DNA of 64,000 nt, from positions 186,001 to 250,000 of the IMG/VR virus record IMGVR_UViG_3300010938_000951; one strand, given 5' to 3'. Positions 3-38,193 of the stretch are shown piece after piece (within the stretch, counting starts at the first letter, position 1; every line of letters starts with the position of its first letter). The translations under genes were made by a program, and so were the position numbers. A model generated the notes under the pieces. It did no database searches and had not been told where the DNA came from. It was given only the letters and a program-made list of their open reading frames with translations.

Positions 3-92
3 TTAATCTTTCAAAGAAGGGTTGATGGTCAGAAGATAGCCGCACCCAAAGGTACCATCATTGTACCTATTTCAGACTTGAGGTTTTCATAA
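3..92 (+). CDS. 3' end of an upstream gene (partial, ...LIFQRRVDGQKIAAPKGTIIVPISDLRFS*)
   Basis: Open frame from the window edge to TAA 90-92, which overlaps the ATG of the next gene (TAATG coupling). Confidence 0.45.
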   Translation, partial: LIFQRRVDGQKIAAPKGTIIVPISDLRFS

Positions 93-442
93 TGAATAAA
101 ACGTTTCTTAAGAAAATGAAAGCTCTATTATTAGAGCAAAAAGTAGAATTATTGAAATCTACTGCACAAGATGTGGTTGTTGATAATGAGGGTGATGAGA
201 CCGATGAAATTCAGGCTAATCAATTGATTGAAATGAATCATCAATTAGCTGTGCGCTCGTCTGCTAAAATGTCTCAAATAGAATCAGCTTTGAAAAGAAT
301 TGAAGAGGGAACATATGGCTTATGTCAAGACTGTGAAGATCCAATTCCAGAAAAGAGACTGCTAAGTAATCCATATTTTCAAACATGTGTGTCTTGTGCT
401 GAAGAGCGTGAAGCGGAAGAAAAACAAAGAAAGAGGTTTTGA
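92..442 (+). CDS. dksA: DksA/TraR-family C4 zinc-finger RNAP secondary-channel factor
   Basis: Coiled coil with DxxD tip (GDETDEI), then ALKRIEEGTYGLCQDC...RL..NP....CVSC. Confidence 0.9.
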   Translation: MNKTFLKKMKALLLEQKVELLKSTAQDVVVDNEGDETDEIQANQLIEMNHQLAVRSSAKMSQIESALKRIEEGTYGLCQDCEDPIPEKRLLSNPYFQTCVSCAEEREAEEKQRKRF

Positions 443-1029
443 TCTTGAATACATTAGTACTTGAGCAAACTGAATATGGCGAAGTGCCCATCGATGTGTA
501 TCAGAAATTATCTAGTGATCGTATTCTGTTTCTAACAGAATCTTTAAATGACGAACTTGCGTCTGATATTGTGGCAACTCTACTGCTAAAGGACAGTGAA
601 GACTCTGATGAAAAGATTACACTTTTCATTAATTGTCATGGTGGTGATATTCGCAATGCATTCATGATTTATGATGTTATGACTATGATTAAAGCGCCTA
701 TTGAAACTATCTGTGTTGGCACCGCTATGGATGAGGCCGTTATTTTGTTGTCTGGTGGTACCAAGGGTATGAGATTTGCAACCCCACATGCAATTATTGC
801 AGCAACACAGTTGGTAGCTGGTTGGCATATGCATACAGATTTGCCGGGTGCCCAAGCTGTTTTTGAGCAAGAAAAGCAAGATAATCAGCGCCTAATGGAG
901 ATTCTATCAAAAACAACTGGTAAATCTTTAACTCAGGTCAAAAAAGATTTTGATCGTCGAGTGTTCTTTAATGCCAAAAGTGCTTTGAAGTATGGTTTTA
1001 TTGATAAAATTGTTTCTTATAGTAAGTAA
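439..1029 (+). CDS. ClpP-fold protein, catalytically dead (ClpR-like)
   Basis: PIDVYQKL..DRILFL, FINCHGG and YGFIDKI are ClpP motifs. The triad positions read D, T and R instead of S, H and D. TTG start with GAGG upstream. Confidence 0.85.
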   Translation: MILNTLVLEQTEYGEVPIDVYQKLSSDRILFLTESLNDELASDIVATLLLKDSEDSDEKITLFINCHGGDIRNAFMIYDVMTMIKAPIETICVGTAMDEAVILLSGGTKGMRFATPHAIIAATQLVAGWHMHTDLPGAQAVFEQEKQDNQRLMEILSKTTGKSLTQVKKDFDRRVFFNAKSALKYGFIDKIVSYSK

Positions 1030-1032
1030 GGT

Positions 1033-1632
1033 ATGAATATGAATAAGAAAGAACAGCCACATCAGCCTGATAATTTTCGCATGCAAATGCCATCAGGATA
1101 TGGTGAAAGTTATGTCAAAATGACAAAAAGCCGATCCTTATTCATTTCGGAAAATGTTTCCGATAGATTAGGTGCCGAGCTATCAGCCATGTTATTATAT
1201 TATGATAATCAAGATCCCGAAGCGGATATTAATATTTACATTCATACCAACGGGGGCGCTACTACTGGTATGGCTAATATTTATGATGTAATGCAGATGA
1301 TACATGCCCCAATCAAAACTATTCTTTTAGGTAAAGCATATTCTGCGGGGGCTTGGATTTTAGCTGGTGGTACGAAGGGTAAGCGATATGCCCTTCATAG
1401 CGCTAAAGTTATGATTCATGGCACTCAATTCACTTTTCCTATTCCTGGATTCGATTTCACAAACAGCAAAAATTATTTGGAATTTGTGAACGAAGAAAAT
1501 GATGCAATGTTGAAAGTTTTAGCAAAGCATACAGGTCAACCTTTTGAAAAAATTAAAGCTGACTGCCAGACTGAATATTGGATGGATGCTAAAGCTGCGA
1601 AAGAATATGGCATTATAGATCATATTTTATAA
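1033..1632 (+). CDS. clpP: ClpP protease subunit
   Basis: IYIHTNGG, GKAYSAG (Ser), MIHG (His) and EYGIIDHI; the catalytic Asp position is Glu. Confidence 0.9.
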   Translation: MNMNKKEQPHQPDNFRMQMPSGYGESYVKMTKSRSLFISENVSDRLGAELSAMLLYYDNQDPEADINIYIHTNGGATTGMANIYDVMQMIHAPIKTILLGKAYSAGAWILAGGTKGKRYALHSAKVMIHGTQFTFPIPGFDFTNSKNYLEFVNEENDAMLKVLAKHTGQPFEKIKADCQTEYWMDAKAAKEYGIIDHIL

Positions 1633-1633
1633 G

Positions 1634-2077
1634 ATGAGTGAAATCATTTTTGATTTGGTATATTCTGATTATGACTGGCAGGAGCATCATTTTGTTAAAG
1701 CTCCTGATGGTACTACTCTAGAAGATTTTCAAAAACTTTGTGATAGCCTTATGCCAAAGGCTGGTTACAAGGCCATTCTAAAAAGATCATCCCCTAAAGT
1801 TGGTGGATGGGTTTGTTGGAGTGATGTTGTGGAGTCGTTGGTATCTTTGTTAGAAGAACAGGGATACCAACGAATTATTTTGGGCTCTTATGTTGTAAAC
1901 GGTGGTGTTATTATTCGGCCAGATGACTATGAGGGCAAAGAAAAATTAGGCTTTTCTTGCCAAGCCATTTCATCTTATAATGGTAAATTAGAAAGAAAAT
2001 TGGCCGAGGAACGAAAGGCCAAGAAACAATTAAGAATTGGTCTTTTAAAGAAAAAGGTAGTTCAAATCATTAAATAG
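1634..2077 (+). CDS. hypothetical protein
   Basis: 147-aa ORF tiling between neighbours; no family recognised. Confidence 0.6.
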   Translation: MSEIIFDLVYSDYDWQEHHFVKAPDGTTLEDFQKLCDSLMPKAGYKAILKRSSPKVGGWVCWSDVVESLVSLLEEQGYQRIILGSYVVNGGVIIRPDDYEGKEKLGFSCQAISSYNGKLERKLAEERKAKKQLRIGLLKKKVVQIIK

Positions 2078-2098: not shown

Positions 2099-3517
2099 AT
2101 GGAAAAGACCGCCCGAAAACCATCTGCTGACCCAATTCAGGAGAAATTAAGACAAAATAAAGCCAATTGGAACAAAGATGTGTCTGCATTTGTGAATAAT
2201 CTTATTCATCTAAAAAAGATGATGAATGGCTGGCCATCCAAGTTTTTCAAAGAGCGCTCTCGTATTACCGATCCTATTCCGGCGGATCCAGCAACTATTA
2301 TTGGTTCATTGGCGGGTGATTTTCAAGAGTTAGCCCAGAGAGGCAATGCTCTTGTACAAGAACAAATTGACTACTCAAAAAATCGTCGTAAAAGACAACC
2401 AAAGCAATTAAATCTACCACTTCAACAACCAGAGCAATCTCCTCAAGCTCCGGAGGCGCCAAAACCTCCAACACCAGATTTATCAAAGCAACTTTCATTG
2501 GGACTAAATGCTTCAAGTGAAAATACTAAGTTATTTAAGTTAGCGTCTGAGATGGAAGAAAAATATTTTCTCGAATCACAGGCATCAAACCCATTTACTC
2601 GTTTTATTGCTAGATTATTTAATCCAAAGTTTGGGTTTGGTGAGGCAGCTCGTATGCGTCGTTTGCGCATGACAATGTTAGATGGTTGTGCAAAGACTTT
2701 CAAAACTCTTAAAGAATTGCAAGCTACAGTAGTTAAATCTTCAGATGCCAGCATAGAACAGTCTCATAAAATGATGACCATGGCATGGAACAATTGGAAC
2801 ATTGTTTATAGGCTTGTGTCTGCTTTTAAAGGACTTAAACCAGGAGATATTAAAGAGTCCGGCGGAGCTATTGAAGATCCCGAATTAAAACGTCAAAGAG
2901 CCATTGAAGAGGGCCGAGATCCAGATGAATCCACAGAATCTCCGGCCATACCATCATCTCAAATAGTTTCAACGCTAGCTAGTAAGATAAAAGATTTCCG
3001 TGGAAATGCTACTTTTATTGGCGCAACTGTAAGTAATCCACAATTTAGAAACATGGTTTCTTTAATGGAACGACTTGCTGCTATGCCAAAAGGTAAAAAT
3101 TTATCAGTTGATGAAATTGCTGAAATAGAGAAAAATTATAATGAAGCCTTAGTGGCTACTGCTAAAGAATTAGGATTTTCCAATATGAGTTCTTTTAGCC
3201 ATATAGCTCAAACGATGGTTACTGTGGCAAATTCTCCAAAGAAAGAAGCGCAAGAATTACGTGGCTATCTTGGTAAGACAAGACATCAATTAATTCCAGG
3301 ATCAACCTCCGGCTCTAGGTTAGAGATTTATAACCTTATTGGTCAAACCAAAAAAGACATAGATGCTTTAATGGATTTGCTTGAAAAAGGTTTTGAGCGT
3401 GAAAAAATTGAAACGTTAGTGGGCCAAATTCATCGTCAGATGTCTGCTTTGCGTACTATGATTCGTTCTCTATTATATTCTACGAAACCAGAGAAAGCAT
3501 CTTCTCCATTTTTCTGA
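2099..3517 (+). CDS. hypothetical multi-domain helical protein with two clamp-binding-like motifs and K-x-A sites
   Basis: 472 aa; Pro-rich linker containing QLNLPL and QLSLGL; EKTAR, FKLAS and KKEAQ at segment borders. Confidence 0.8.
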   Translation: MEKTARKPSADPIQEKLRQNKANWNKDVSAFVNNLIHLKKMMNGWPSKFFKERSRITDPIPADPATIIGSLAGDFQELAQRGNALVQEQIDYSKNRRKRQPKQLNLPLQQPEQSPQAPEAPKPPTPDLSKQLSLGLNASSENTKLFKLASEMEEKYFLESQASNPFTRFIARLFNPKFGFGEAARMRRLRMTMLDGCAKTFKTLKELQATVVKSSDASIEQSHKMMTMAWNNWNIVYRLVSAFKGLKPGDIKESGGAIEDPELKRQRAIEEGRDPDESTESPAIPSSQIVSTLASKIKDFRGNATFIGATVSNPQFRNMVSLMERLAAMPKGKNLSVDEIAEIEKNYNEALVATAKELGFSNMSSFSHIAQTMVTVANSPKKEAQELRGYLGKTRHQLIPGSTSGSRLEIYNLIGQTKKDIDALMDLLEKGFEREKIETLVGQIHRQMSALRTMIRSLLYSTKPEKASSPFF

Positions 3518-10327: not shown

Positions 10328-10351
10328 TAAGGTTAAAACGGGTTTTTGAAA

Positions 10352-10726
10352 ATGAAAGACCATAATAGAAAAAACAAGAGGAATACCAAAAAGGCATCGA
10401 GAGGAGGTGAATCGCAGCCAGTCGCCGTCAACGACAAATTCGCACACATTGAACCAGTGCAAGCCCAACCCCTCGAAGTCAAAGTGTATGGGAACAATTT
10501 CGACAAAGCCTTAAGGGCTTTTCGAGCCCTCGTTCAAAAAGAACGTGTTCTCTCGTCATATAAAGAAAAGCAATCGTACGAGAAGCCATCTGACAAACGT
10601 AGGAGAAAGCGCAACGAATCCAAAAGGAAACAACTTGAACTTTGTAGCAAGGGAGACTGTAGACATACAGATCATGCTAAAAACCGTAAGGAAAGAAAGT
10701 TCAAGAGAGGCTCTTCTCCAGAATAA
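10352..10726 (+). CDS. rpsU: ribosomal protein bS21 with N- and C-terminal extensions
   Basis: VKVYGNNFDKALRAFRALVQKERVL..YKEKQSYEKPSDKRRRKR core; ATG 10352 or TTG 10346. Confidence 0.85.
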   Translation: MKDHNRKNKRNTKKASRGGESQPVAVNDKFAHIEPVQAQPLEVKVYGNNFDKALRAFRALVQKERVLSSYKEKQSYEKPSDKRRRKRNESKRKQLELCSKGDCRHTDHAKNRKERKFKRGSSPE

Positions 10727-14315: not shown

Positions 14316-14843
14316 ATGATAATCACAAATAATGAAGCAGCGCTCCGTGTGTTTTGCGAGCCTGTCACTATGGATGAAGTTGGCTCACTTATAGATACAC
14401 TAGAAAAAGAGCTAGAGTACGCTAATCGTTTGGGAAAAAACGGAATTGGATTAGCGGCACCACAAATAGGTATCGCAAAAGATATTGCTATTGTTAGGTT
14501 GCCAAAAATGAACTTTAATTTAGTTAATGCTAAATTAGTTCAAGGATATGATCCTGCTGTGTTTACAGACGAAGGTTGTTTGTCTTTCCCTGGTCGTCTA
14601 GAAAATACCACTAGATTTCAAGAGGTTCATATAACTAATAATTTGGTTGAACCGTATAGTTTTATTGCGACAGGTTTTGTGGCAGTTGTATGTCAACACG
14701 AATTGGATCATTTAAACTCTACACTATTTATGGATCGTAGTATCCCAAAACAGACACCAGTAGTTAGAAAAGCAAAAATCGGACCAAATGAGCCATGTGT
14801 TTGCGGATCTGGCAAAAAATATAAAAAGTGTTGTGGTCGATGA
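14316..14843 (+). CDS. def: peptide deformylase with C-terminal SEC-C motif
   Basis: [17 protein letters not shown] and QHELDH; ends [21 protein letters not shown]. Confidence 0.95.
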
Positions 14844-23489: not shown

Positions 23490-24737
23490 ATGCAAATTGA
23501 AGTAACTGAATTAGAACCATGCAGACTGTCTGTTCACTATGAGGCTAACTTCCTGGAAATCTCTGATAAGAGAGCAGAAGTTGAAAGTGCTTTTAAGAAA
23601 GCTCCTGTACCAGGATTTAGACCAGGTAAAGTACCACCTGAAGCTATTAGAGTTCATTATCGTCAACAGATTGACGACTCTCTAAAGCGCGCGCTTGCAG
23701 AAGATGCATTTCACAATACTCTTTTCGAAAAGAAAATTAGACCACATGGTGCCCCACGTTTTAATAGTTTACTATTAGACGGCGGTAAGTTTACTTGTGA
23801 CTTTGAAATTCTAACCAAGCCCGATTTTGAAGTGCCTGCTTGGAAAGATATGGAAGTCGCAAAGCCACACGGGGAAATGGAAGCGTCTGTTCTAGCCGAG
23901 AAAATGATGCAAGAGTTGCGTGTTCGTTTAGGTGAAGTATCTCCTTATACCGATACTGATTTCGTTCAATCTGGAGACAATGTCATCATTGATTATAAAG
24001 GCACCGTAGATGGTCAAGTTGTTGATAGTCTAGTGGCTGAAGGAGAGATGATTACTATTGGTAATAGCCCATTAGCCGCTTTTGATAACAACTTATTAGG
24101 TATGTCCTTAGATGAAGTCCGTGAATTTGATTTCGTGGCACCTCCACAAGGATTACCATCTTTAGCTGGTAAAACTGTTCACTTTACAGTCACATTGAAG
24201 ATGGGCTCTAAGACCGTTCCATGTGCCCTAGATGATGAAATGGCAAAAAAGATGGGTAAAAATACGTTTGAAGAATTACAGGAAACTGTATCTCAAGCAG
24301 CTTTTGCTCGTGCAGCTAATATGAATAAGATGGCAGTTCAAGAAGCAGTAGCTAGAAAACTTATTACTAGTGTTGATATTAAAGTTCCAAATTGGATGTC
24401 TTTATCTGAAGCGCAATATCTAAGCCACCAATCCCAACTAGATTGGAATGCTATGCAAGATTCAGACAGAGAGAAAATGATTGAAATGGCCGAGCAAAAT
24501 GTTAAGTTATCTTTGATTCTAGATAAGATTAGAGAATCTGAGCCGGAAGCACAGCTAACTGACCAGGAAGTGTTTGAAATTATCAAACAAAATTTGGCCA
24601 ATACCAAAGTGACGCAAAGTTTAGATGAGGTCATTCAGCAAATGAATAAGACAGGTTATCTACAAATTTTGTTCCAGCGCATTAAAGATGAAAATACTAT
24701 GGATTACATAGTAAAGTCAGTAAAGTTGATTGATTAA
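23490..24737 (+). CDS. tig: trigger factor
   Basis: Ribosome-binding loop PGFRPGKVP; FKBP segment GDNVIIDY.G..DG...FD..L.GM; C-terminal KLSLILDKI. Confidence 0.93.
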   Translation: MQIEVTELEPCRLSVHYEANFLEISDKRAEVESAFKKAPVPGFRPGKVPPEAIRVHYRQQIDDSLKRALAEDAFHNTLFEKKIRPHGAPRFNSLLLDGGKFTCDFEILTKPDFEVPAWKDMEVAKPHGEMEASVLAEKMMQELRVRLGEVSPYTDTDFVQSGDNVIIDYKGTVDGQVVDSLVAEGEMITIGNSPLAAFDNNLLGMSLDEVREFDFVAPPQGLPSLAGKTVHFTVTLKMGSKTVPCALDDEMAKKMGKNTFEELQETVSQAAFARAANMNKMAVQEAVARKLITSVDIKVPNWMSLSEAQYLSHQSQLDWNAMQDSDREKMIEMAEQNVKLSLILDKIRESEPEAQLTDQEVFEIIKQNLANTKVTQSLDEVIQQMNKTGYLQILFQRIKDENTMDYIVKSVKLID

Positions 24738-26020: not shown

Positions 26021-26142
26021 TGTAAGACCCACACCGTATTCCCTGGCACAGTACACGCAGTCTATCCTTAGATTGAAAATTCCCCTGAGATTGGGTAAGA
26101 TGTACACACGTGTTACAATACACAACCATATCAGGAGGTCAT

Positions 26143-29100
26143 ATGACCGACTTTGTTTCTCTGCATAATCAGACGCAGTTTTCTATTCTTGATTCAATTA
26201 TTACACCAAAGGCCCTTTTCAAACGAGCAAAAGAGTTAGGACAAACAGCGATTGCAGTTACTGATCATGGCTCTTTAGCTGGAGCCTGGGATGCCTGGAA
26301 AGCTTCAAAAGAAACTGGTGTCAAACTTATTATTGGATGCGAGTGTTATTTTCAAGATGATGCATCTAATGTTAATGAAAAGTTCCGCCATATTGTATTG
26401 TTGGCGAAGAATGCCGTTGGATATCGTAATCTTTTGACGTTAAATAAGAAAGGTTTCGATCAGAGTTCTTTTGTAGGTAAGCGCGTTTATTCTGTACTTG
26501 ATTGGAAGTTGCTGGAGCAGCATGCTGAGGGTTTAATTTGTTTAACAGCATGTGGTAATGGTATCATCAGCCAACCTATTATGAAGGGTAAAATGGATGA
26601 AGCAGAGAAAACTCTATTGCGACTTAAAGATTTGTTCGGTGATAATTTAGGTATTGAAATTCAGCCTAACAATATGAAGCGCGGTTCAAATATTTTTAAT
26701 GATGAAATCGATCAAGATTTTTTGAACAGACAATTAGTGAAGCTTGGCAAGAAACACAATGTTCGTGTTGTGGCTGCCTGTAATGCTCATTATCTAACTA
26801 AAGAAGATGCGGATGTACATGATGCATTCCTTGCTATTGGTGCGCATCAACCAAAGCATTCTGGTTTTCGTTTAAAGTATCCTGTACCAGAATTTTATCT
26901 CAAAACTGGCGATGAAGTTAAAGAGTTTTTTGCCAGAGTGTATCGCGATGACGCACAAACATTCGTTGACAATTCTGTATATTTTGCTAATCTGTGTGAA
27001 AAGCCTGAGTGGATTGATCCAAAGTTTTCCAATCCATCTGGCAAAGAGCTTCCTGTATTTCCTGTTAAAGATGAACCAGATTATCTGGAATTCCGTGACT
27101 GGGTTATTCAGCAATCAGAAAGCATTCAAAAATTAGAGGAAGACAAGCTTTTCTTACGTTATCGTTGTATTAAACGTTTTGATTCTCGTGTAAAGAACCT
27201 TACTCCAGAGCAGCGTGAACAATATAATAAACGCATAGAAGAAGAGTTAGATGTTTTAGAGTACCACGGATTCTCCAGCTATATGCTCATTGTAGCAGAT
27301 TTTATAGAATGGGCTAGAAAAAATGAAATTGCTGTTGGTGAAGGCCGCGGCTCTGTTGGTGGTTCACTAGTAGCGTATTTGCTAGGAATCCATCAAGCAG
27401 ATCCGATTAAATATAATTTGATTTTTGCTAGATTCCACAACAAAGAGAAGTCCAGCTTCCCTGATATTGATACCGACTTTGCACCGTCTGGTCGTGAAAA
27501 AGTACAAAACTATCTACGCCAGAAATATGGTGAAGATCATGTGGCGCACGTTAGTAACGTAAATACTATTACACCAAAAGTGTATGTTAAAGACATTGCT
27601 CGTATTTTTGAATTTGGCGGCTCTAAAGAGGAGGCGTTTAAGATTGGTAATGAAATCGCTAATTGTATTCCGGCGGAAATTCATTCTATTGAGGATGCAT
27701 TGGCAAAAGTTCCGCTATTTGCGGAATACGCCAAGAAATATCCAGAGTTCGAAAGATACAAGGATATCTGTGGAAAGTACCGTGCTTGGTCCACTCACGC
27801 CGGTGGTATTATCATCTCCGCTCGTCCCCTGACTGGACTTGTTCCACTCAGAAAGGATAAGGATGGAGCACTAGCTATTGAGTATGATAAGGATAAGGCC
27901 GAAGAAAATGGTCTAGTCAAAATGGATACCTTGGGCCTTTCAACTTTAGATATTATTGGCCAAGCTATGAAGCTGATCAAAGAGTCTGGAAAGACTCTTC
28001 CGGAAGATATTAATTATGACGAGTACGATCAAAGTGCTTACGATGTAATTTCAAATGGCGACACTTTCTGTGTCTTTCAGCTTGGAACATCTGGTGGAAC
28101 TATTGATTTGTGCAAACAAATCAAGCCAAGGTCTATCAATGATATTAGTTATATTAACTCACTTGCTCGCCCATCTGCTCGCGATATGAGAAAAGATTTT
28201 ATCTTAACCAAAGATGGCAAGAAACCATTCGCACTACTACATCCTACTTTGGGTCGAGCATTTAATAATACATTTGGATTTGGTCTCTACGAAGAGTCTC
28301 TAATGTATTTAGCTCAAGATGTAGCTGGTTGGAGTTTGCACTCTGCTGACCGTTTGCGAAAACTTACGAAGGAAAAAGGTAAGAATCCCAAGAAAGCTCA
28401 AGAATGGCGCGCGGAATTTATTAAAGATGCCATTGCCAACAATGTTAATGAAAATATTGCTAAACGCATTTGGGATGAGGTCGTAGATAAATTCCAGGGT
28501 TATGGTTTTAATATGTCTCACTCTATCTTGTATTCTATGACAAGTTACAAGACAGCATACTTAAAAGCACACTACCCAATTGAATTTTTAATGGCCAACT
28601 TAATGGCTGAAGTTAAGTCTAATGCACCAGATGCAAAAGGCAATATTGAGAAAATCAAAAAGGAAATTCGTAAACGTAGAGTTAAAATTGTTCCGCCTGA
28701 TATCAATAAATCACAACTCGCTTATACTATCGAAGATGGTAACAAACTAATTACTGGGCTAGATGCTATTAAATTTGTTGGTATTGATGCCATTAAGGAT
28801 ATTATTGAGAAACGACCATTTACTAGCTTCTTTGATTTTATGTCTAGAGTTAGTTCGAAAACAGTACGTGCGAATAGTATTCAGGCTTTGGCGGCATGTG
28901 GCGCGCTTGATTCCTTCGGAATTTCTCGTAAGCTAATGTATCTGTATTGTTCAGATTACCGCAAGAAACTACAAGTGTGGCTTAAAAAGCACGATCCAAC
29001 TAAAGAAGAGTTTATTTATCCTTGGCCAGCAGAACCCAATTGGTCTATGCCGGAAATATATGCTTTAGAGCATTATTACCTTGGTGAATCATTTACTTGT

Positions 29101-29655
29101 AAACCTGCGTTAGCGTATGGTAAATTTTTTGATGGTGATGCTGTGACTGTTCAAGAAATTAAACGCATGAAAGATAAGGCCAATGTATCATCAGTGAAAG
29201 GTATTATTCGCGATTTCTTTGAATTCCGTGTTAAAAAAGAGGGCAAGTATTATGGTCAAGCCATGATCAAGGCTGTCATTGAAGACAAGAATGGCGATCA
29301 ATGTACTTTAACTATTTTCCCGGATCGTTGGAAAATCGTACAAGAACGAATTCAAGAACTTAACAAAAAAGCCGAATTCGATATAGGTATAGCATTGTTC
29401 TTCTCTGGTAACACGAATTCTTATGAAGACGACATGGGAATCATATTGGATCAATTATACCACATTGCATTACCGCCCTCTCTTCCGGCCGATCTAAAAG
29501 CTAAGAAAATAAACCTTAAAGAGGCAAAAGCTAAGCTTTTCGGAGAAGTACCCGAGGAAAAACCTAAGAGTCCTCAAGAGATACTTGATCAAATAGAGGA
29601 TACTTTATATGATGAGGGTCTTATCGACTTGGATGACGAATCTGAGGATGACTGA
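26143..29655 (+). CDS. dnaE: DNA polymerase III alpha subunit (family C)
   Basis: PHP domain (TDHG, HIVLLAKN), GRGS.GGSLVAY, PDIDTDF, STHAGG, KMD.LGL and YGFN.SH; AGGAGG SD before ATG 26143. Confidence 0.97.
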   Translation: MTDFVSLHNQTQFSILDSIITPKALFKRAKELGQTAIAVTDHGSLAGAWDAWKASKETGVKLIIGCECYFQDDASNVNEKFRHIVLLAKNAVGYRNLLTLNKKGFDQSSFVGKRVYSVLDWKLLEQHAEGLICLTACGNGIISQPIMKGKMDEAEKTLLRLKDLFGDNLGIEIQPNNMKRGSNIFNDEIDQDFLNRQLVKLGKKHNVRVVAACNAHYLTKEDADVHDAFLAIGAHQPKHSGFRLKYPVPEFYLKTGDEVKEFFARVYRDDAQTFVDNSVYFANLCEKPEWIDPKFSNPSGKELPVFPVKDEPDYLEFRDWVIQQSESIQKLEEDKLFLRYRCIKRFDSRVKNLTPEQREQYNKRIEEELDVLEYHGFSSYMLIVADFIEWARKNEIAVGEGRGSVGGSLVAYLLGIHQADPIKYNLIFARFHNKEKSSFPDIDTDFAPSGREKVQNYLRQKYGEDHVAHVSNVNTITPKVYVKDIARIFEFGGSKEEAFKIGNEIANCIPAEIHSIEDALAKVPLFAEYAKKYPEFERYKDICGKYRAWSTHAGGIIISARPLTGLVPLRKDKDGALAIEYDKDKAEENGLVKMDTLGLSTLDIIGQAMKLIKESGKTLPEDINYDEYDQSAYDVISNGDTFCVFQLGTSGGTIDLCKQIKPRSINDISYINSLARPSARDMRKDFILTKDGKKPFALLHPTLGRAFNNTFGFGLYEESLMYLAQDVAGWSLHSADRLRKLTKEKGKNPKKAQEWRAEFIKDAIANNVNENIAKRIWDEVVDKFQGYGFNMSHSILYSMTSYKTAYLKAHYPIEFLMANLMAEVKSNAPDAKGNIEKIKKEIRKRRVKIVPPDINKSQLAYTIEDGNKLITGLDAIKFVGIDAIKDIIEKRPFTSFFDFMSRVSSKTVRANSIQALAACGALDSFGISRKLMYLYCSDYRKKLQVWLKKHDPTKEEFIYPWPAEPNWSMPEIYALEHYYLGESFTCKPALAYGKFFDGDAVTVQEIKRMKDKANVSSVKGIIRDFFEFRVKKEGKYYGQAMIKAVIEDKNGDQCTLTIFPDRWKIVQERIQELNKKAEFDIGIALFFSGNTNSYEDDMGIILDQLYHIALPPSLPADLKAKKINLKEAKAKLFGEVPEEKPKSPQEILDQIEDTLYDEGLIDLDDESEDD

Positions 29656-36694: not shown

Positions 36695-37267
36695 ATGGTT
36701 AAAACGGTCTTAGGATTCGACGCATCGAGTACGACTATTGGTTATTCTATATTAAGTTGGGACGAAACAACAAATAATATAGCCTTTGTCAAAGCCGGCT
36801 ACATTAAACCAAAGAAGACAGGATCTATTATTGAAAGAATAGTAGATACTAGAAATCAGGTTCAAAAAGTTATTGTTGATGCTAAACCTGATTATATTTC
36901 AATTGAAGAGATTATTCAATTTATGAAAGGCAAAAGCACAGCAAAAACTATTATTATGTTGACTACATTTAATAGGATGATTTGTTTAACGGCTTATGAT
37001 TATCTTGGTAAAGAACCTACTCTTTATAGTGTTATGACTATTCGTCATGGATTAAAGACCACCAAAGATTTACCAAAAAAAGAAGATATGCCGGCCCTTG
37101 TCGCCCAACATTTAGGAATTACGTTTCCCTACGAGTATAATAAGAAGGGCGGCATTAAAATCGAAAGCTATGACAAAGCTGACGGTGTTGCAGTGGCCCT
37201 TTATCACGCATTGGCCTTATCGGGCAAGGTGAAATCTAAAGGAAAGTCTAAAGGCAAGAAGAAATGA
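36695..37267 (+). CDS. ruvC: RuvC-like Holliday junction resolvase
   Basis: VLGFDASS..GY, ISIEE and DKADG.AVA. Confidence 0.85.
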   Translation: MVKTVLGFDASSTTIGYSILSWDETTNNIAFVKAGYIKPKKTGSIIERIVDTRNQVQKVIVDAKPDYISIEEIIQFMKGKSTAKTIIMLTTFNRMICLTAYDYLGKEPTLYSVMTIRHGLKTTKDLPKKEDMPALVAQHLGITFPYEYNKKGGIKIESYDKADGVAVALYHALALSGKVKSKGKSKGKKK

Positions 37268-38193
37268 ATTTAAAGGAAGCCTACGCAATTTTAGAATTGT
37301 CTCCCGGTGCCACGCCAGAGGAAGTCAAGAAGAAGTACCGAGAACTTACTAAAAAATATCACCCTGACATAAATAAAGAGCCGGGAGCAGAAGAGAAGTT
37401 CAAGAAAATTAATGAAGCTCATGAAGTTGTCAAGACTGGTAAAAGTACTGATTTACAGGATCGTATGCCAAGACAGGGAGGGTTTCATCGTCAACAGCAA
37501 TTCATTCAATTAGAAAATGTTGAAATGTTTACAACTATTTCTTTCAAGGAATCTGTTTTAGGTTGTAAGAAAGAGATTAAATATGATCGTCAAACCAAAT
37601 GCCAAAATTGTAATGGTCAAGGTGAAATAAGACTCCATAATGGCTGCAAAAAATGTGGTGGGCGAGGGCAGATTACTACTCGGCAAGGAAATATGATAGT
37701 TATGACCACTTGTGATGAGTGTTATGGTCGTTCTAATGTATCAACCTGTGATGTATGTAGTGGTAATGGTACCGTCCAGGCGCACGCATCTGTGCACGTG
37801 TCTATACCTGCGGGTATTGTAAATGGCAATACATTGCGATTGCAGGGTATGGGAAATTTTGCCGGCTCTTTTATGGGTCTAGCTGATCAATATACAGATG
37901 CATTTTTGCATGTAGCAGTTACTCCAGAGCCTGGATTATCTTTAGATGGGCAAAATGTAATAAGTACGCTTACTATTTCGTTATTAGATGCATTGCGTGG
38001 CTGTAAACGTATGGTGAAAACCATTCATGGTGAAAAAGAAATTCAAATTAAACCGCAATCCAGAAATCATGATGAGGTAATTATTCCTCATCATGGGGTA
38101 AATAATATGGGTAATCAAAAGGTTATTTTGGATGTAGAATACCCTAAGAATACTGATAAATTGATTAGTGTTCTATTAGATGAGGTAGTATAA
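37264..38193 (+). CDS. dnaJ: DnaJ (type I-like: J domain, four Cys repeats, C-terminal domain; G/F region short)
   Basis: YHPD, CQNCNGQG, CKKCGGRG, CDEC and CDVCSGNG. Confidence 0.93.
   Translation: MNLKEAYAILELSPGATPEEVKKKYRELTKKYHPDINKEPGAEEKFKKINEAHEVVKTGKSTDLQDRMPRQGGFHRQQQFIQLENVEMFTTISFKESVLGCKKEIKYDRQTKCQNCNGQGEIRLHNGCKKCGGRGQITTRQGNMIVMTTCDECYGRSNVSTCDVCSGNGTVQAHASVHVSIPAGIVNGNTLRLQGMGNFAGSFMGLADQYTDAFLHVAVTPEPGLSLDGQNVISTLTISLLDALRGCKRMVKTIHGEKEIQIKPQSRNHDEVIIPHHGVNNMGNQKVILDVEYPKNTDKLISVLLDEVV

What the first reader, a model, noticed from the sequence alone, without database searches (positions are those of the whole stretch)
2405..2506. Two tandem beta-clamp-binding-like motifs in a candidate virion-delivered protein
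Seen: QLNLPL (2405-2422) and QLSLGL (2489-2506), 28 aa apart in a disordered Pro-rich linker. Established: E. coli Hda uses QLSLPL and Pol IV uses QLVLGL to bind the dimeric clamp, which has two pockets. The gene follows motif B and carries K-x-A sites, one just after the second motif (LFKLAS). Inference: a bivalent clamp ligand, perhaps packaged and matured in the head, that blocks host replication or recruits the clamp to the phage DnaE. No clamp gene is in the window.
Basis: partly seen in the sequence, partly recalled or inferred. Interest (0 to 1): 0.7.

Follow-up and report, generated by a model that had tools for sequence, protein, structure and literature searches.

The report
Huge-phage protein with two clamp-binding motifs
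A conserved protein of unknown function in a roughly 490-kb phage carries, in a floppy linker, two short peptides that match the docking motif bacterial proteins use to grip the DNA sliding clamp, so it probably latches onto both pockets of the host clamp; there is no sign that it travels in the virus particle.

Summary
ORF 2099-3517 (+), 472 aa, encodes QLNLPL (aa 103-108) and QLSLGL (aa 131-136). Both fit the canonical beta-clamp-binding motif, and both lie in a low-confidence, Pro-rich linker between all-helical domains.

Chance is unlikely: two strict QLxLxL within 40 aa is about 3e-5 per protein. Across 250 family members, motif matches number 120 against 18 in shuffles, and they pile up at exactly these two sites. 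The motifs are islands of conservation in a fast-evolving spacer. Distant relatives swap the hexapeptide for the pentapeptide QLSLF or QLNLF. A co-fold with an E. coli DnaN dimer places one motif in each cleft (score 0.70, best control 0.02), though that may partly reflect memory of solved complexes.

Only about a quarter of homologues carry a motif. The linker exists in three exchangeable forms that do not follow the protein tree. Clamp binding is therefore an accessory, lineage-specific trait of an orphan core protein, not the reason the family exists.

Complete relatives encode DnaE but no recognisable clamp or clamp loader. DnaE lacks a clamp motif whatever the linker type.

The K-x-A sites (3 seen, 3.6 expected) and virion delivery are unsupported. 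Whether binding inhibits the clamp or tethers to it is undecided.

The parts
2099..3517 (+). Gene X: 472-aa orphan, all-helical protein (P0001), a conserved core gene of a clade of huge phages.
   Evidence: ORF. More than 280 homologues and 547 clusters at 50% identity. No Pfam, PHROG or PDB-sequence match. AF2 model is all-alpha, pLDDT 78.8. Fold searches are uninformative.
2099..2398 (+). N-terminal conserved helical hairpin (aa 1-100); the most conserved part of the family.
   Evidence: Invariant and near-invariant columns. Helices 12-42 and 64-99, pLDDT 86-92.
2405..2422 (+). Clamp-binding-like motif 1, QLNLPL (aa 103-108).
   Evidence: Family hot spot with 55 matches at this column. 81% identity across type-A pairs that are only 40% identical elsewhere. 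Docks in the cleft of one DnaN protomer in the co-fold.
2423..2488 (+). Pro-rich, fast-evolving spacer (aa 109-130) between the motifs.
   Evidence: pLDDT 38-49. 27% identity among type-A pairs. Start-to-start spacing of the motifs has mode 28 and range 19-31.
2489..2506 (+). Clamp-binding-like motif 2, QLSLGL (aa 131-136), built on the family-wide conserved P-D-L-S-x-Q-L.
   Evidence: 38 matches at this column. Replaced by QLSLF, QLNLF or QLALF in distant members. Docks in the cleft of the second protomer.
2591..3514 (+). C-terminal all-alpha domain (aa 165-472), ending in a conserved P-F-F.
92..2077 (+). Conserved upstream neighbours: DksA-like zinc finger (92-442), ClpP paralogue lacking Ser and His (439-1029), ClpP with Ser and His (1033-1632), and a 147-aa orphan (1634-2077).
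   Evidence: Pfam. Alignments to PDB 3q7h. The DksA and both ClpP genes precede X in all 16 IMG/VR loci; the 147-aa orphan was found in only part of them.
26110..29655 (+). Phage DnaE (Pol III alpha) without a recognisable clamp-binding motif; context for the clamp question.
   Evidence: Pfam. Motif scan. Same region in relatives.

Best explanation
Gene X encodes a conserved orphan helical protein of a clade of huge phages (genomes about 450-500 kb).

In this phage and in a minority of its relatives, the disordered linker between the N-terminal hairpin and the C-terminal helical domain carries two short linear motifs, QLNLPL and QLSLGL. I infer that these are genuine beta-clamp-binding motifs.

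The phage clade encodes no recognisable clamp, so the target would be the host DnaN dimer. The Pro-rich spacer of about 22 residues would let one molecule plug both hydrophobic clefts of one ring at once (avidity).

I think the most likely consequence is that X is tethered to host clamps, on or off DNA, while shutting out the host's clamp clients: Pol III, the clamp loader delta subunit, Hda and repair enzymes.

Shown here: motif presence, consensus fit, disordered context, family-wide enrichment at two fixed sites, SLiM-type conservation, and a co-fold that passes its controls.

Inferred, not shown: actual binding, the identity of the host clamp, and whether the outcome is inhibition, recruitment or both.
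For: - Both peptides fit Q-aliphatic-x-[L/M]-x-[F/L]. Motif 1 is one residue from Hda's QLSLPL, and relatives carry exactly QLSLPL at site 2.
- The motifs lie in a low-pLDDT linker, which is where such motifs usually reside.
- Across 250 family members there are 120 motif matches against 18.4 in shuffles (maximum 33). Proteins with two or more number 37 against 0.7. 93 of the 120 fall at the two linker columns.
- Among type-A pairs only 40% identical elsewhere, site 1 is 81% identical, site 2 59% and the spacer 27%. In motif-less type-B pairs the values are 32%, 40% and 28%.
- Among the family sequences matching the motif at these sites, the third and fifth residues vary (N/P/E at site 1; S/A/E/Q and G/P/A at site 2), as expected for this motif. 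Distant members switch to the pentapeptides QLSLF, QLNLF or QLALF at the same place, which is the known hexamer/pentamer degeneracy of the motif.
- The two motifs are gained or lost together: in independent pairs, 8.3 go the same way against 0.1 the opposite way, median p 0.008. Spacing is conserved around 28.
- Co-fold with 2 x E. coli DnaN: ipSAE 0.70 (0.69-0.71) against a best control of 0.02. That mark was reached by 51 of 78 solved complexes and 2 of 108 mismatched pairs. Runs agree in at least 85% of contacts and partner pLDDT is about 60. Motif 1 contacts residues 172-177, 242, 247, 320, 344-346 and 360-366 of one protomer; motif 2 contacts the same cleft of the other.
- No DnaN (PF00712, PF02768, TIGR00663) and no PF13177 clamp-loader subunit was found in the record or in four relatives, two rated 100% complete. 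All encode DnaE.
- There is a precedent: phage Mu MuC uses two such motifs to engage the host clamp (PMC12867686).
Against: - 70% of the 250 family members have no strict motif at all, so the family's core function does not need the clamp.
- The Q-L of site 2 belongs to a family-wide conserved P-D-L-S-x-Q-L that is kept in motif-less forms (QLGKGL, QMGKQL). Part of that conservation therefore has another cause.
- The co-gain and co-loss of the two motifs could simply reflect exchange of an 84-nt-spaced cassette by recombination.
- The co-fold used E. coli DnaN as a stand-in because the host is unknown. Many clamp-peptide complexes are solved, so the pass may come from memory and shows likeness, not binding.
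- I could not run the obvious negative control, a type-B linker from a close homologue.
- A third of type-A proteins have QLSLP[S/T/A/H/N] at site 2, lacking the final hydrophobic residue.
- A very divergent phage clamp could escape the Pfam and TIGRFAM models.
Confidence: 0.55

Rival explanations
1. Dedicated host-replication inhibitor. X exists to sequester the host clamp by stapling both clefts, stopping host DNA synthesis early in infection, possibly after delivery from the virion.
For: Bivalent geometry and the co-fold. The phage has no clamp of its own to be harmed. Phage clamp inhibitors exist, such as Twort Gp168 (PMC8565349). MuC overexpression is lethal through its clamp motifs.
Against: A 472-aa protein with about 400 conserved structured residues is far more than a clamp plug needs. 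70% of orthologues lack the motifs yet keep the rest. There is no evidence of packaging: the gene lies in a replication/proteostasis block and K-x-A is at chance.
Confidence: 0.15
2. Clamp adaptor for the phage replisome. X bridges the host clamp to the phage DnaE, which has no clamp motif of its own.
For: DnaE lacks the internal Qxx[LM]F motif upstream of its OB-domain segment. No clamp or clamp loader is encoded. X lies in the replication gene region.
Against: DnaE is equally motif-less in relatives whose X carries a type-B or motif-free linker (G001, G002). Those phages replicate without this bridge, so there is no compensatory pattern.
Confidence: 0.12
3. Adaptor of the neighbouring phage ClpP-like/ClpP pair. 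X delivers the clamp, or clamp-bound proteins, to the phage-encoded protease for degradation.
For: In all 16 loci examined, X follows the two ClpP genes, directly or after a 147-aa orphan ORF. The first ClpP paralogue has lost Ser and His and the second keeps them, suggesting a specialised hetero-complex. X ends in a conserved hydrophobic P-F-F.
Against: This rests on gene order alone, in a genome where every gene is on one strand. No unfoldase partner was identified. There is no known precedent for such an adaptor fold.
Confidence: 0.05
4. Not clamp-related. The Q-L-x-L-x-L peptides are docking sites for another partner (for example a chaperone such as DnaK/DnaJ, or another phage protein), or a neutral variant of a low-complexity linker spread by recombination.
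For: Most homologues lack them. The linker forms are exchanged as cassettes regardless of the protein tree. Leu-rich peptides flanked by basic residues also resemble generic chaperone sites (my own knowledge). The phage encodes DnaJ and trigger factor.
Against: Gln is kept as the first motif residue at both sites, and the Q-L of site 2 is near-invariant even in motif-less forms. The hexamer-to-pentamer (QLSLF) switch and the exact QLSLPL copies are specific to the clamp motif. Site conservation is far above that of the spacer. The co-fold passes its controls.
Confidence: 0.2

Closest known systems
[quoted passage not shown]
   Same: Same hexapeptide class, Q-L-x-L-x-L, in a flexible segment. 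Motif 1 differs from Hda's by one residue, and relatives carry QLSLPL exactly. In the co-fold both dock in the cleft between clamp domains II and III.
   Different: Hda and Pol IV each carry one motif, at a terminus of a protein with known catalytic or AAA+ function. X carries two internal motifs in one linker and has no homology to either protein.
Phage Mu MuC (Mor/C family late-transcription activator) with two clamp-binding motifs
   Same: A phage protein that engages the host clamp through two near-consensus motifs; overproduction is toxic through the clamp (PMC12867686).
   Different: MuC is a small DNA-binding transcription factor with pentapeptide motifs at its two termini (QHDLF, QPDLF). 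X is a 472-aa orphan with two hexapeptides 28 residues apart in one linker. There is no sequence or fold relation, and no evidence that X acts in transcription.
Phage Twort Gp168 and other phage clamp inhibitors
   Same: A phage protein aimed at the host DnaN (PMC8565349; PMC11139829).
   Different: Gp168 occupies the DNA channel, not the canonical cleft, and is a small dedicated inhibitor.
IS transposases with clamp-binding motifs
   Same: Mobile-element proteins in which a clamp motif is an add-on to an unrelated core function (PMC4549789).
   Different: The core function (transposition) is known, and I know of no tandem arrangement spanning both clefts (own knowledge).
Tandem disordered PCNA-binding motifs (for example Spd1; multi-PIP polymerases)
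   Same: Several clamp motifs in one disordered region, giving avidity or competition (cited in PMC11139829).
   Different: Eukaryotic trimeric PCNA and PIP/APIM motifs rather than the bacterial dimeric clamp.

Membership tests
Beta-clamp-binding proteins (carriers of a canonical CBM short linear motif) | Peptide matching Q-aliphatic-x-[L/M]-[F/L] or Q-aliphatic-x-[L/M]-x-[F/L]. | tested here: met
   QLNLPL (aa 103-108) and QLSLGL (aa 131-136). Definition from PMC11139829.
Beta-clamp-binding proteins (carriers of a canonical CBM short linear motif) | Motif lies in an accessible, flexible region (a terminus, disordered linker or loop). | tested here: met
   pLDDT 38-54 over aa 101-140 in the AF2 model.
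Beta-clamp-binding proteins (carriers of a canonical CBM short linear motif) | Motif conserved in homologues, with key positions 1, 2, 4 and the last fixed and the others free. | tested here: inconclusive
   Conserved in this way within the type-A subset down to 35-40% overall identity. Absent from about 70% of the family.
Beta-clamp-binding proteins (carriers of a canonical CBM short linear motif) | Motif docks in the hydrophobic cleft between domains II and III of DnaN. | tested here: met
   Prediction only. ipSAE 0.70 against a best control of 0.02; that mark was reached by 51 of 78 solved complexes and 2 of 108 mismatched pairs. Cleft residues 172-177, 242, 247, 320, 344-346 and 360-366 are contacted by each motif on separate protomers. 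May reflect memory of solved complexes, and E. coli DnaN was used as a proxy.
Beta-clamp-binding proteins (carriers of a canonical CBM short linear motif) | Physical, motif-dependent binding to DnaN. | not testable with these tools
   Needs pull-down, ITC or two-hybrid with Q-to-A and L-to-A mutants.
Virion-packaged (ejected) phage proteins processed by a prohead protease | Gene in or next to the head/structural module, with enriched and conserved protease cleavage motifs. | tested here: not met
   The gene lies in the conserved DksA / ClpP-like / ClpP / X / DUF192 / FtsK-like / TopA block, with the terminase about 47 kb away. K-x-A occurs 3 times against 3.6 expected.
Virion-packaged (ejected) phage proteins processed by a prohead protease | Detected in virion proteomes. 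| not testable with these tools
   No cultured relative: tblastn against 50,697 phage records found nothing.
Mor/MuC clamp-dependent transcription activators | Sequence or fold homology to Mor/C. | tested here: not met
   No Pfam hit and no structural match to any known family.

The most novel reading that the evidence does not exclude
X is a host-takeover factor of huge phages that staples both clefts of the host sliding clamp with a single disordered linker. This clamp-binding linker is one of three interchangeable cassettes that recombine through the phage population, giving a presence/absence polymorphism of clamp hijacking. It may be tuned to the host or driven by host defence, and it may work together with the adjacent phage ClpP-like/ClpP pair or the motif-less phage DnaE.
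Probability: 0.12. Interest if true: 0.75.

Novelty: new member of a known kind. Interest (0 to 1): 0.5.

Why it matters
Huge phages encode a bacterial-type replicative polymerase. In this clade they encode no recognisable clamp or clamp loader, so how they deal with the host replisome is open.

A conserved orphan protein that plugs both clefts of the host clamp would give a concrete, testable handle on that question. It would add a second phage example, after Mu MuC, of two-motif clamp engagement. It would also be a natural bivalent ligand of the bacterial clamp, and a recent review of the clamp (PMC11139829) says the role of several motifs in one partner is not yet understood.

The cassette-like presence or absence of the motifs offers natural negative controls for such experiments.

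The finding is still a prediction, and the family's core function remains unknown.

Tried and rejected
- Annotation of X found nothing usable. I tried Pfam (single protein and all 104 members), PHROGs, PDB sequence search, Foldseek against PDB, BFVD, AFDB clusters and the ESM Atlas, and the protein atlas. The only real hit is an uncharacterised phage homologue.
- No cultured relative was found: megablast and tblastn against GenBank phages returned nothing.
- Host identification failed. Scans of GTDB genomes with the X profile and with the phage S21 found nothing, so E. coli DnaN was used as a proxy.
- I looked for a compensatory pattern, a clamp motif in DnaE where X lacks one. There is none.
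- I looked for a DNA-level repeat or RNA feature under the motifs. The codons differ and the repeats are trivial.
- K-x-A cleavage sites are at chance.
- A third 'QLSLF' site at family position 397 sits in a conserved, confidently folded loop whose Gln is often K, E or G. I treated it as structural, not as evidence.
- A negative-control co-fold (type-B linker) and an X-DnaE or X-ClpP co-fold could not be run, because the cap is one job.

Full report
**Where the window comes from.** All long ORFs lie on the + strand and GC is about 38%. The window is part of an IMG/VR virus record of 266,899 bp. That record was cut from a 490,849-bp JGI metagenome contig.

Genes in and around the window include:
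- a DksA-like zinc finger, two ClpP paralogues, DUF192 and an FtsK-like ATPase;
- topoisomerase I, ribosomal protein S21, IF3 and HU;
- peptide deformylase and a primase zinc ribbon;
- an Mre11/Rad50-like pair, trigger factor, DnaE (Pol III alpha) and RecA;
- DnaJ, a Cas4-like nuclease and a GpA-type large terminase.

This is the gene content described for huge phages (PMC7162821). No cultured relative exists in GenBank phages.

**The observation.** Window 2405-2506 translates to QLNLPLQQPEQSPQAPEAPKPPTPDLSKQLSLGL, inside ORF 2099-3517, 472 aa, here called X.

Both hexapeptides fit the published canonical clamp-binding motif, Q-aliphatic-x-[L/M]-x-[F/L] (PMC11139829).

Shuffling X gives two loose matches within 40 residues in 0.4% of trials. 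Two strict QLxLxL within 40 residues are expected at about 2.6e-5 per protein. X is the only ORF of the 267-kb record with two matches. The two peptides use different codons, so this is not a DNA repeat.

**What X is.** X has more than 280 close homologues, and a profile search finds 547 clusters at 50% identity. None is annotated. The source contigs reach 506 kb.

Pfam, PHROGs and PDB sequence searches are empty. An AF2 model built on 104 homologues is entirely helical (pLDDT 78.8, pTM 0.48). It shows a confident N-terminal hairpin (aa 12-99), a confident C-terminal helical domain (about aa 180-465) and a low-confidence stretch at aa 101-180 that holds both motifs. Fold searches return only an uncharacterised phage homologue.

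In all 16 IMG/VR loci the order DksA / ClpP-like / ClpP / X / DUF192 / FtsK-like / 445-aa orphan is kept; a 147-aa orphan ORF sits just before X in part of them. X is the fastest-evolving member, about 35% identical where its neighbours are 50-65%.

**Are the motifs selected?** Among 250 family members of at least 350 aa, strict motif matches number 120 against 18.4 in shuffles (maximum 33). Proteins with two or more matches number 37 against 0.7. The matches concentrate at family positions 103 (55 matches) and 131 (38 matches).

Among the sequences that match the motif at these two columns, the third and fifth residues vary: N/P/E at site 1, and S/A/E/Q and G/P/A at site 2.

Distant members carry the pentapeptides QLSLF, QLNLF or QLALF at the second site. 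This is the known hexamer/pentamer degeneracy of the motif.

Among motif-bearing ('type A') pairs only 40% identical elsewhere, site 1 is 81% identical, site 2 59% and the spacer 27%. Motif-less type-B pairs show 32%, 40% and 28%. Site 1 was used to define type A, but site 2 was not. Start-to-start spacing is 26-31 in most two-motif proteins, with mode 28. This is the pattern of short linear motifs embedded in a disordered spacer.

**But the motifs are not a family-wide trait.** Only 24% of the 250 proteins have at least one strict linker motif, and only 12% have two. The linker comes in three forms:
- type A: KQLNLPL ... QLSLGL or QLSLPL;
- type B: KAPAAPQ ... QLGKGL or QMGKQL;
- type C: a different stretch of about 35 residues, H-x-K-R-x-T-x-x-T-L-x-x-L-E-x-x-x-G-P, ... 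QLGKGL.

On a tree built without the linker columns, each motif needs 18 changes of state among 104 proteins. The two motifs change together: in independent pairs, 8.3 go the same way against 0.1 the other way, median p 0.008.

The linker type is discordant with the rest of the protein:
- P0012 (A) is 80% identical to P0019 (B) outside the linker but 50% within it. Its linker is 76% identical to that of P0009, which is 53% identical elsewhere.
- P0033, P0046 and P0053 carry type C inside clades of type A and B.

I read this as cassette exchange by recombination, an inference. It means the co-occurrence of the two motifs may reflect physical linkage as much as function. It also means the core function of X does not require clamp binding.

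**Predicted complex.** X aa 95-148 was folded with two copies of E. coli DnaN. The score was ipSAE 0.70 (runs 0.69-0.71), against 0.02 for the best of three controls. That mark was reached by 51 of 78 solved complexes and 2 of 108 mismatched pairs. Runs agree in at least 85% of contacts, and partner pLDDT is about 60.

Motif 1 contacts residues 152/155, 172, 174-177, 240-247, 320, 344, 346, 360 and 362-366 of one protomer. Motif 2 contacts the same cleft of the other protomer, so the spacer bridges the two clefts of one ring.

Three caveats apply. Many clamp-peptide complexes are solved, so the pass may be memory of likeness. The host is unknown, so E. coli DnaN is a proxy. The negative control with a type-B linker could not be run.

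**Clamp context.** No DnaN is detectable with PF00712, PF02768 or TIGR00663, and no PF13177 clamp-loader subunit. This holds in the record itself and in four relatives, two of them rated 100% complete (480 and 448 kb). All five encode DnaE.

The phage DnaE has no Qxx[LM]F-type motif where bacterial alpha subunits carry it (location from my own knowledge), upstream of the segment aligned to 'EHYYLGESF'. The same is true in relatives whose X has a type-B or motif-free linker. There is therefore no compensatory pattern, which weakens the idea that X is the obligatory bridge between the host clamp and phage DnaE. A very divergent phage clamp cannot be excluded.

K-x-A occurs 3 times against 3.6 expected. 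'LFKLAS' belongs to a family-wide conserved helix, L-I-K-L-A. The gene lies in a replication/proteostasis block about 47 kb from the terminase. Nothing supports packaging or head maturation.

The upstream ClpP genes are true ClpP homologues. They match solved bacterial ClpP structures at about 119-130 bits, rather than being obvious prohead proteases. The first has lost the catalytic Ser and His, and the second keeps them.

**Verdict.** The most likely reading is that the type-A linker of X is a bivalent ligand of the host sliding clamp: an accessory module on an orphan core protein of huge phages, confidence about 0.55.

Whether it blocks the clamp, rides on it, or feeds it to the neighbouring protease is not decided by the data.

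The kind of interaction is well known. The nearest precedent for a two-motif phage protein is Mu MuC (PMC12867686). I therefore rate this a new member of a known kind, with unusual features: two motifs in one linker predicted to span both clefts, and a cassette polymorphism.

Noticed in passing
window 439-1029 and 1033-1632: There are two adjacent ClpP paralogues. Aligned to a solved ClpP (PDB 3q7h), the first has Asp in place of the catalytic Ser and Ala in place of His (GTAMDEA, IIAATQ), like the inactive ClpR subunits. The second keeps Ser and His. The pair is conserved in all 16 related loci.
   Followed up: partly
window 3284-3313 (X aa 396-405) and relatives P0101, P0110, P0114, P0120, P0125, P0134, P0140: In 13 family members a conserved, confidently folded loop reads H-Q-L-S-L-F-D-K-T-S, the exact consensus pentapeptide for clamp binding. 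Here it reads HQLIPGSTSG. Ten of those 13 members lack linker motifs. The Gln is often K, E or G in other members, so the loop may be purely structural.
   Followed up: partly
window 2356-2520 (X aa 86-140) compared with P0004, P0012, P0019, P0033, P0046, P0053: The linker of X exists in three sequence forms that do not follow the tree of the rest of the protein, which looks like cassette recombination within a gene.
   Followed up: yes
window 26110-29655; G001-G004: The phage DnaE has no recognisable clamp-binding motif. The clade, including two records rated 100% complete, has no detectable DnaN or delta-prime/tau-type clamp-loader subunit. How this polymerase achieves processivity is open.
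   Followed up: partly
window 3503-3514 (X C-terminus): The extreme C-terminus of X ends in a conserved P-F-F, after a near-invariant Pro464. A terminal hydrophobic tag next to ClpP genes might be a docking or degradation signal. Not tested.
   Followed up: no
proteins P0193, P0196, P0206, P0225, P0229, P0237 (distant family members): These longer relatives (570-691 aa) appear to carry the N-terminal domain twice: a second 'K-x-W-N-K ... N-G-K-S-x-K-F' segment follows the first.
   Followed up: no
window 14316-14843; 23490-24737; 37264-38193; 10346-10726: The phage encodes a peptide deformylase with a C-terminal SEC-C motif, a trigger factor, a DnaJ and ribosomal protein S21. This is an unusually full set of co-translational and proteostasis genes.
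   Followed up: no
G000 and G001 (IMG/VR records): IMG/VR labels these records 'provirus', although the source contig is 490,849 bp and phage-like genes (S21, IF3, HU, ClpP) extend beyond the record. The label looks like a trimming artefact, not evidence of integration.
   Followed up: no
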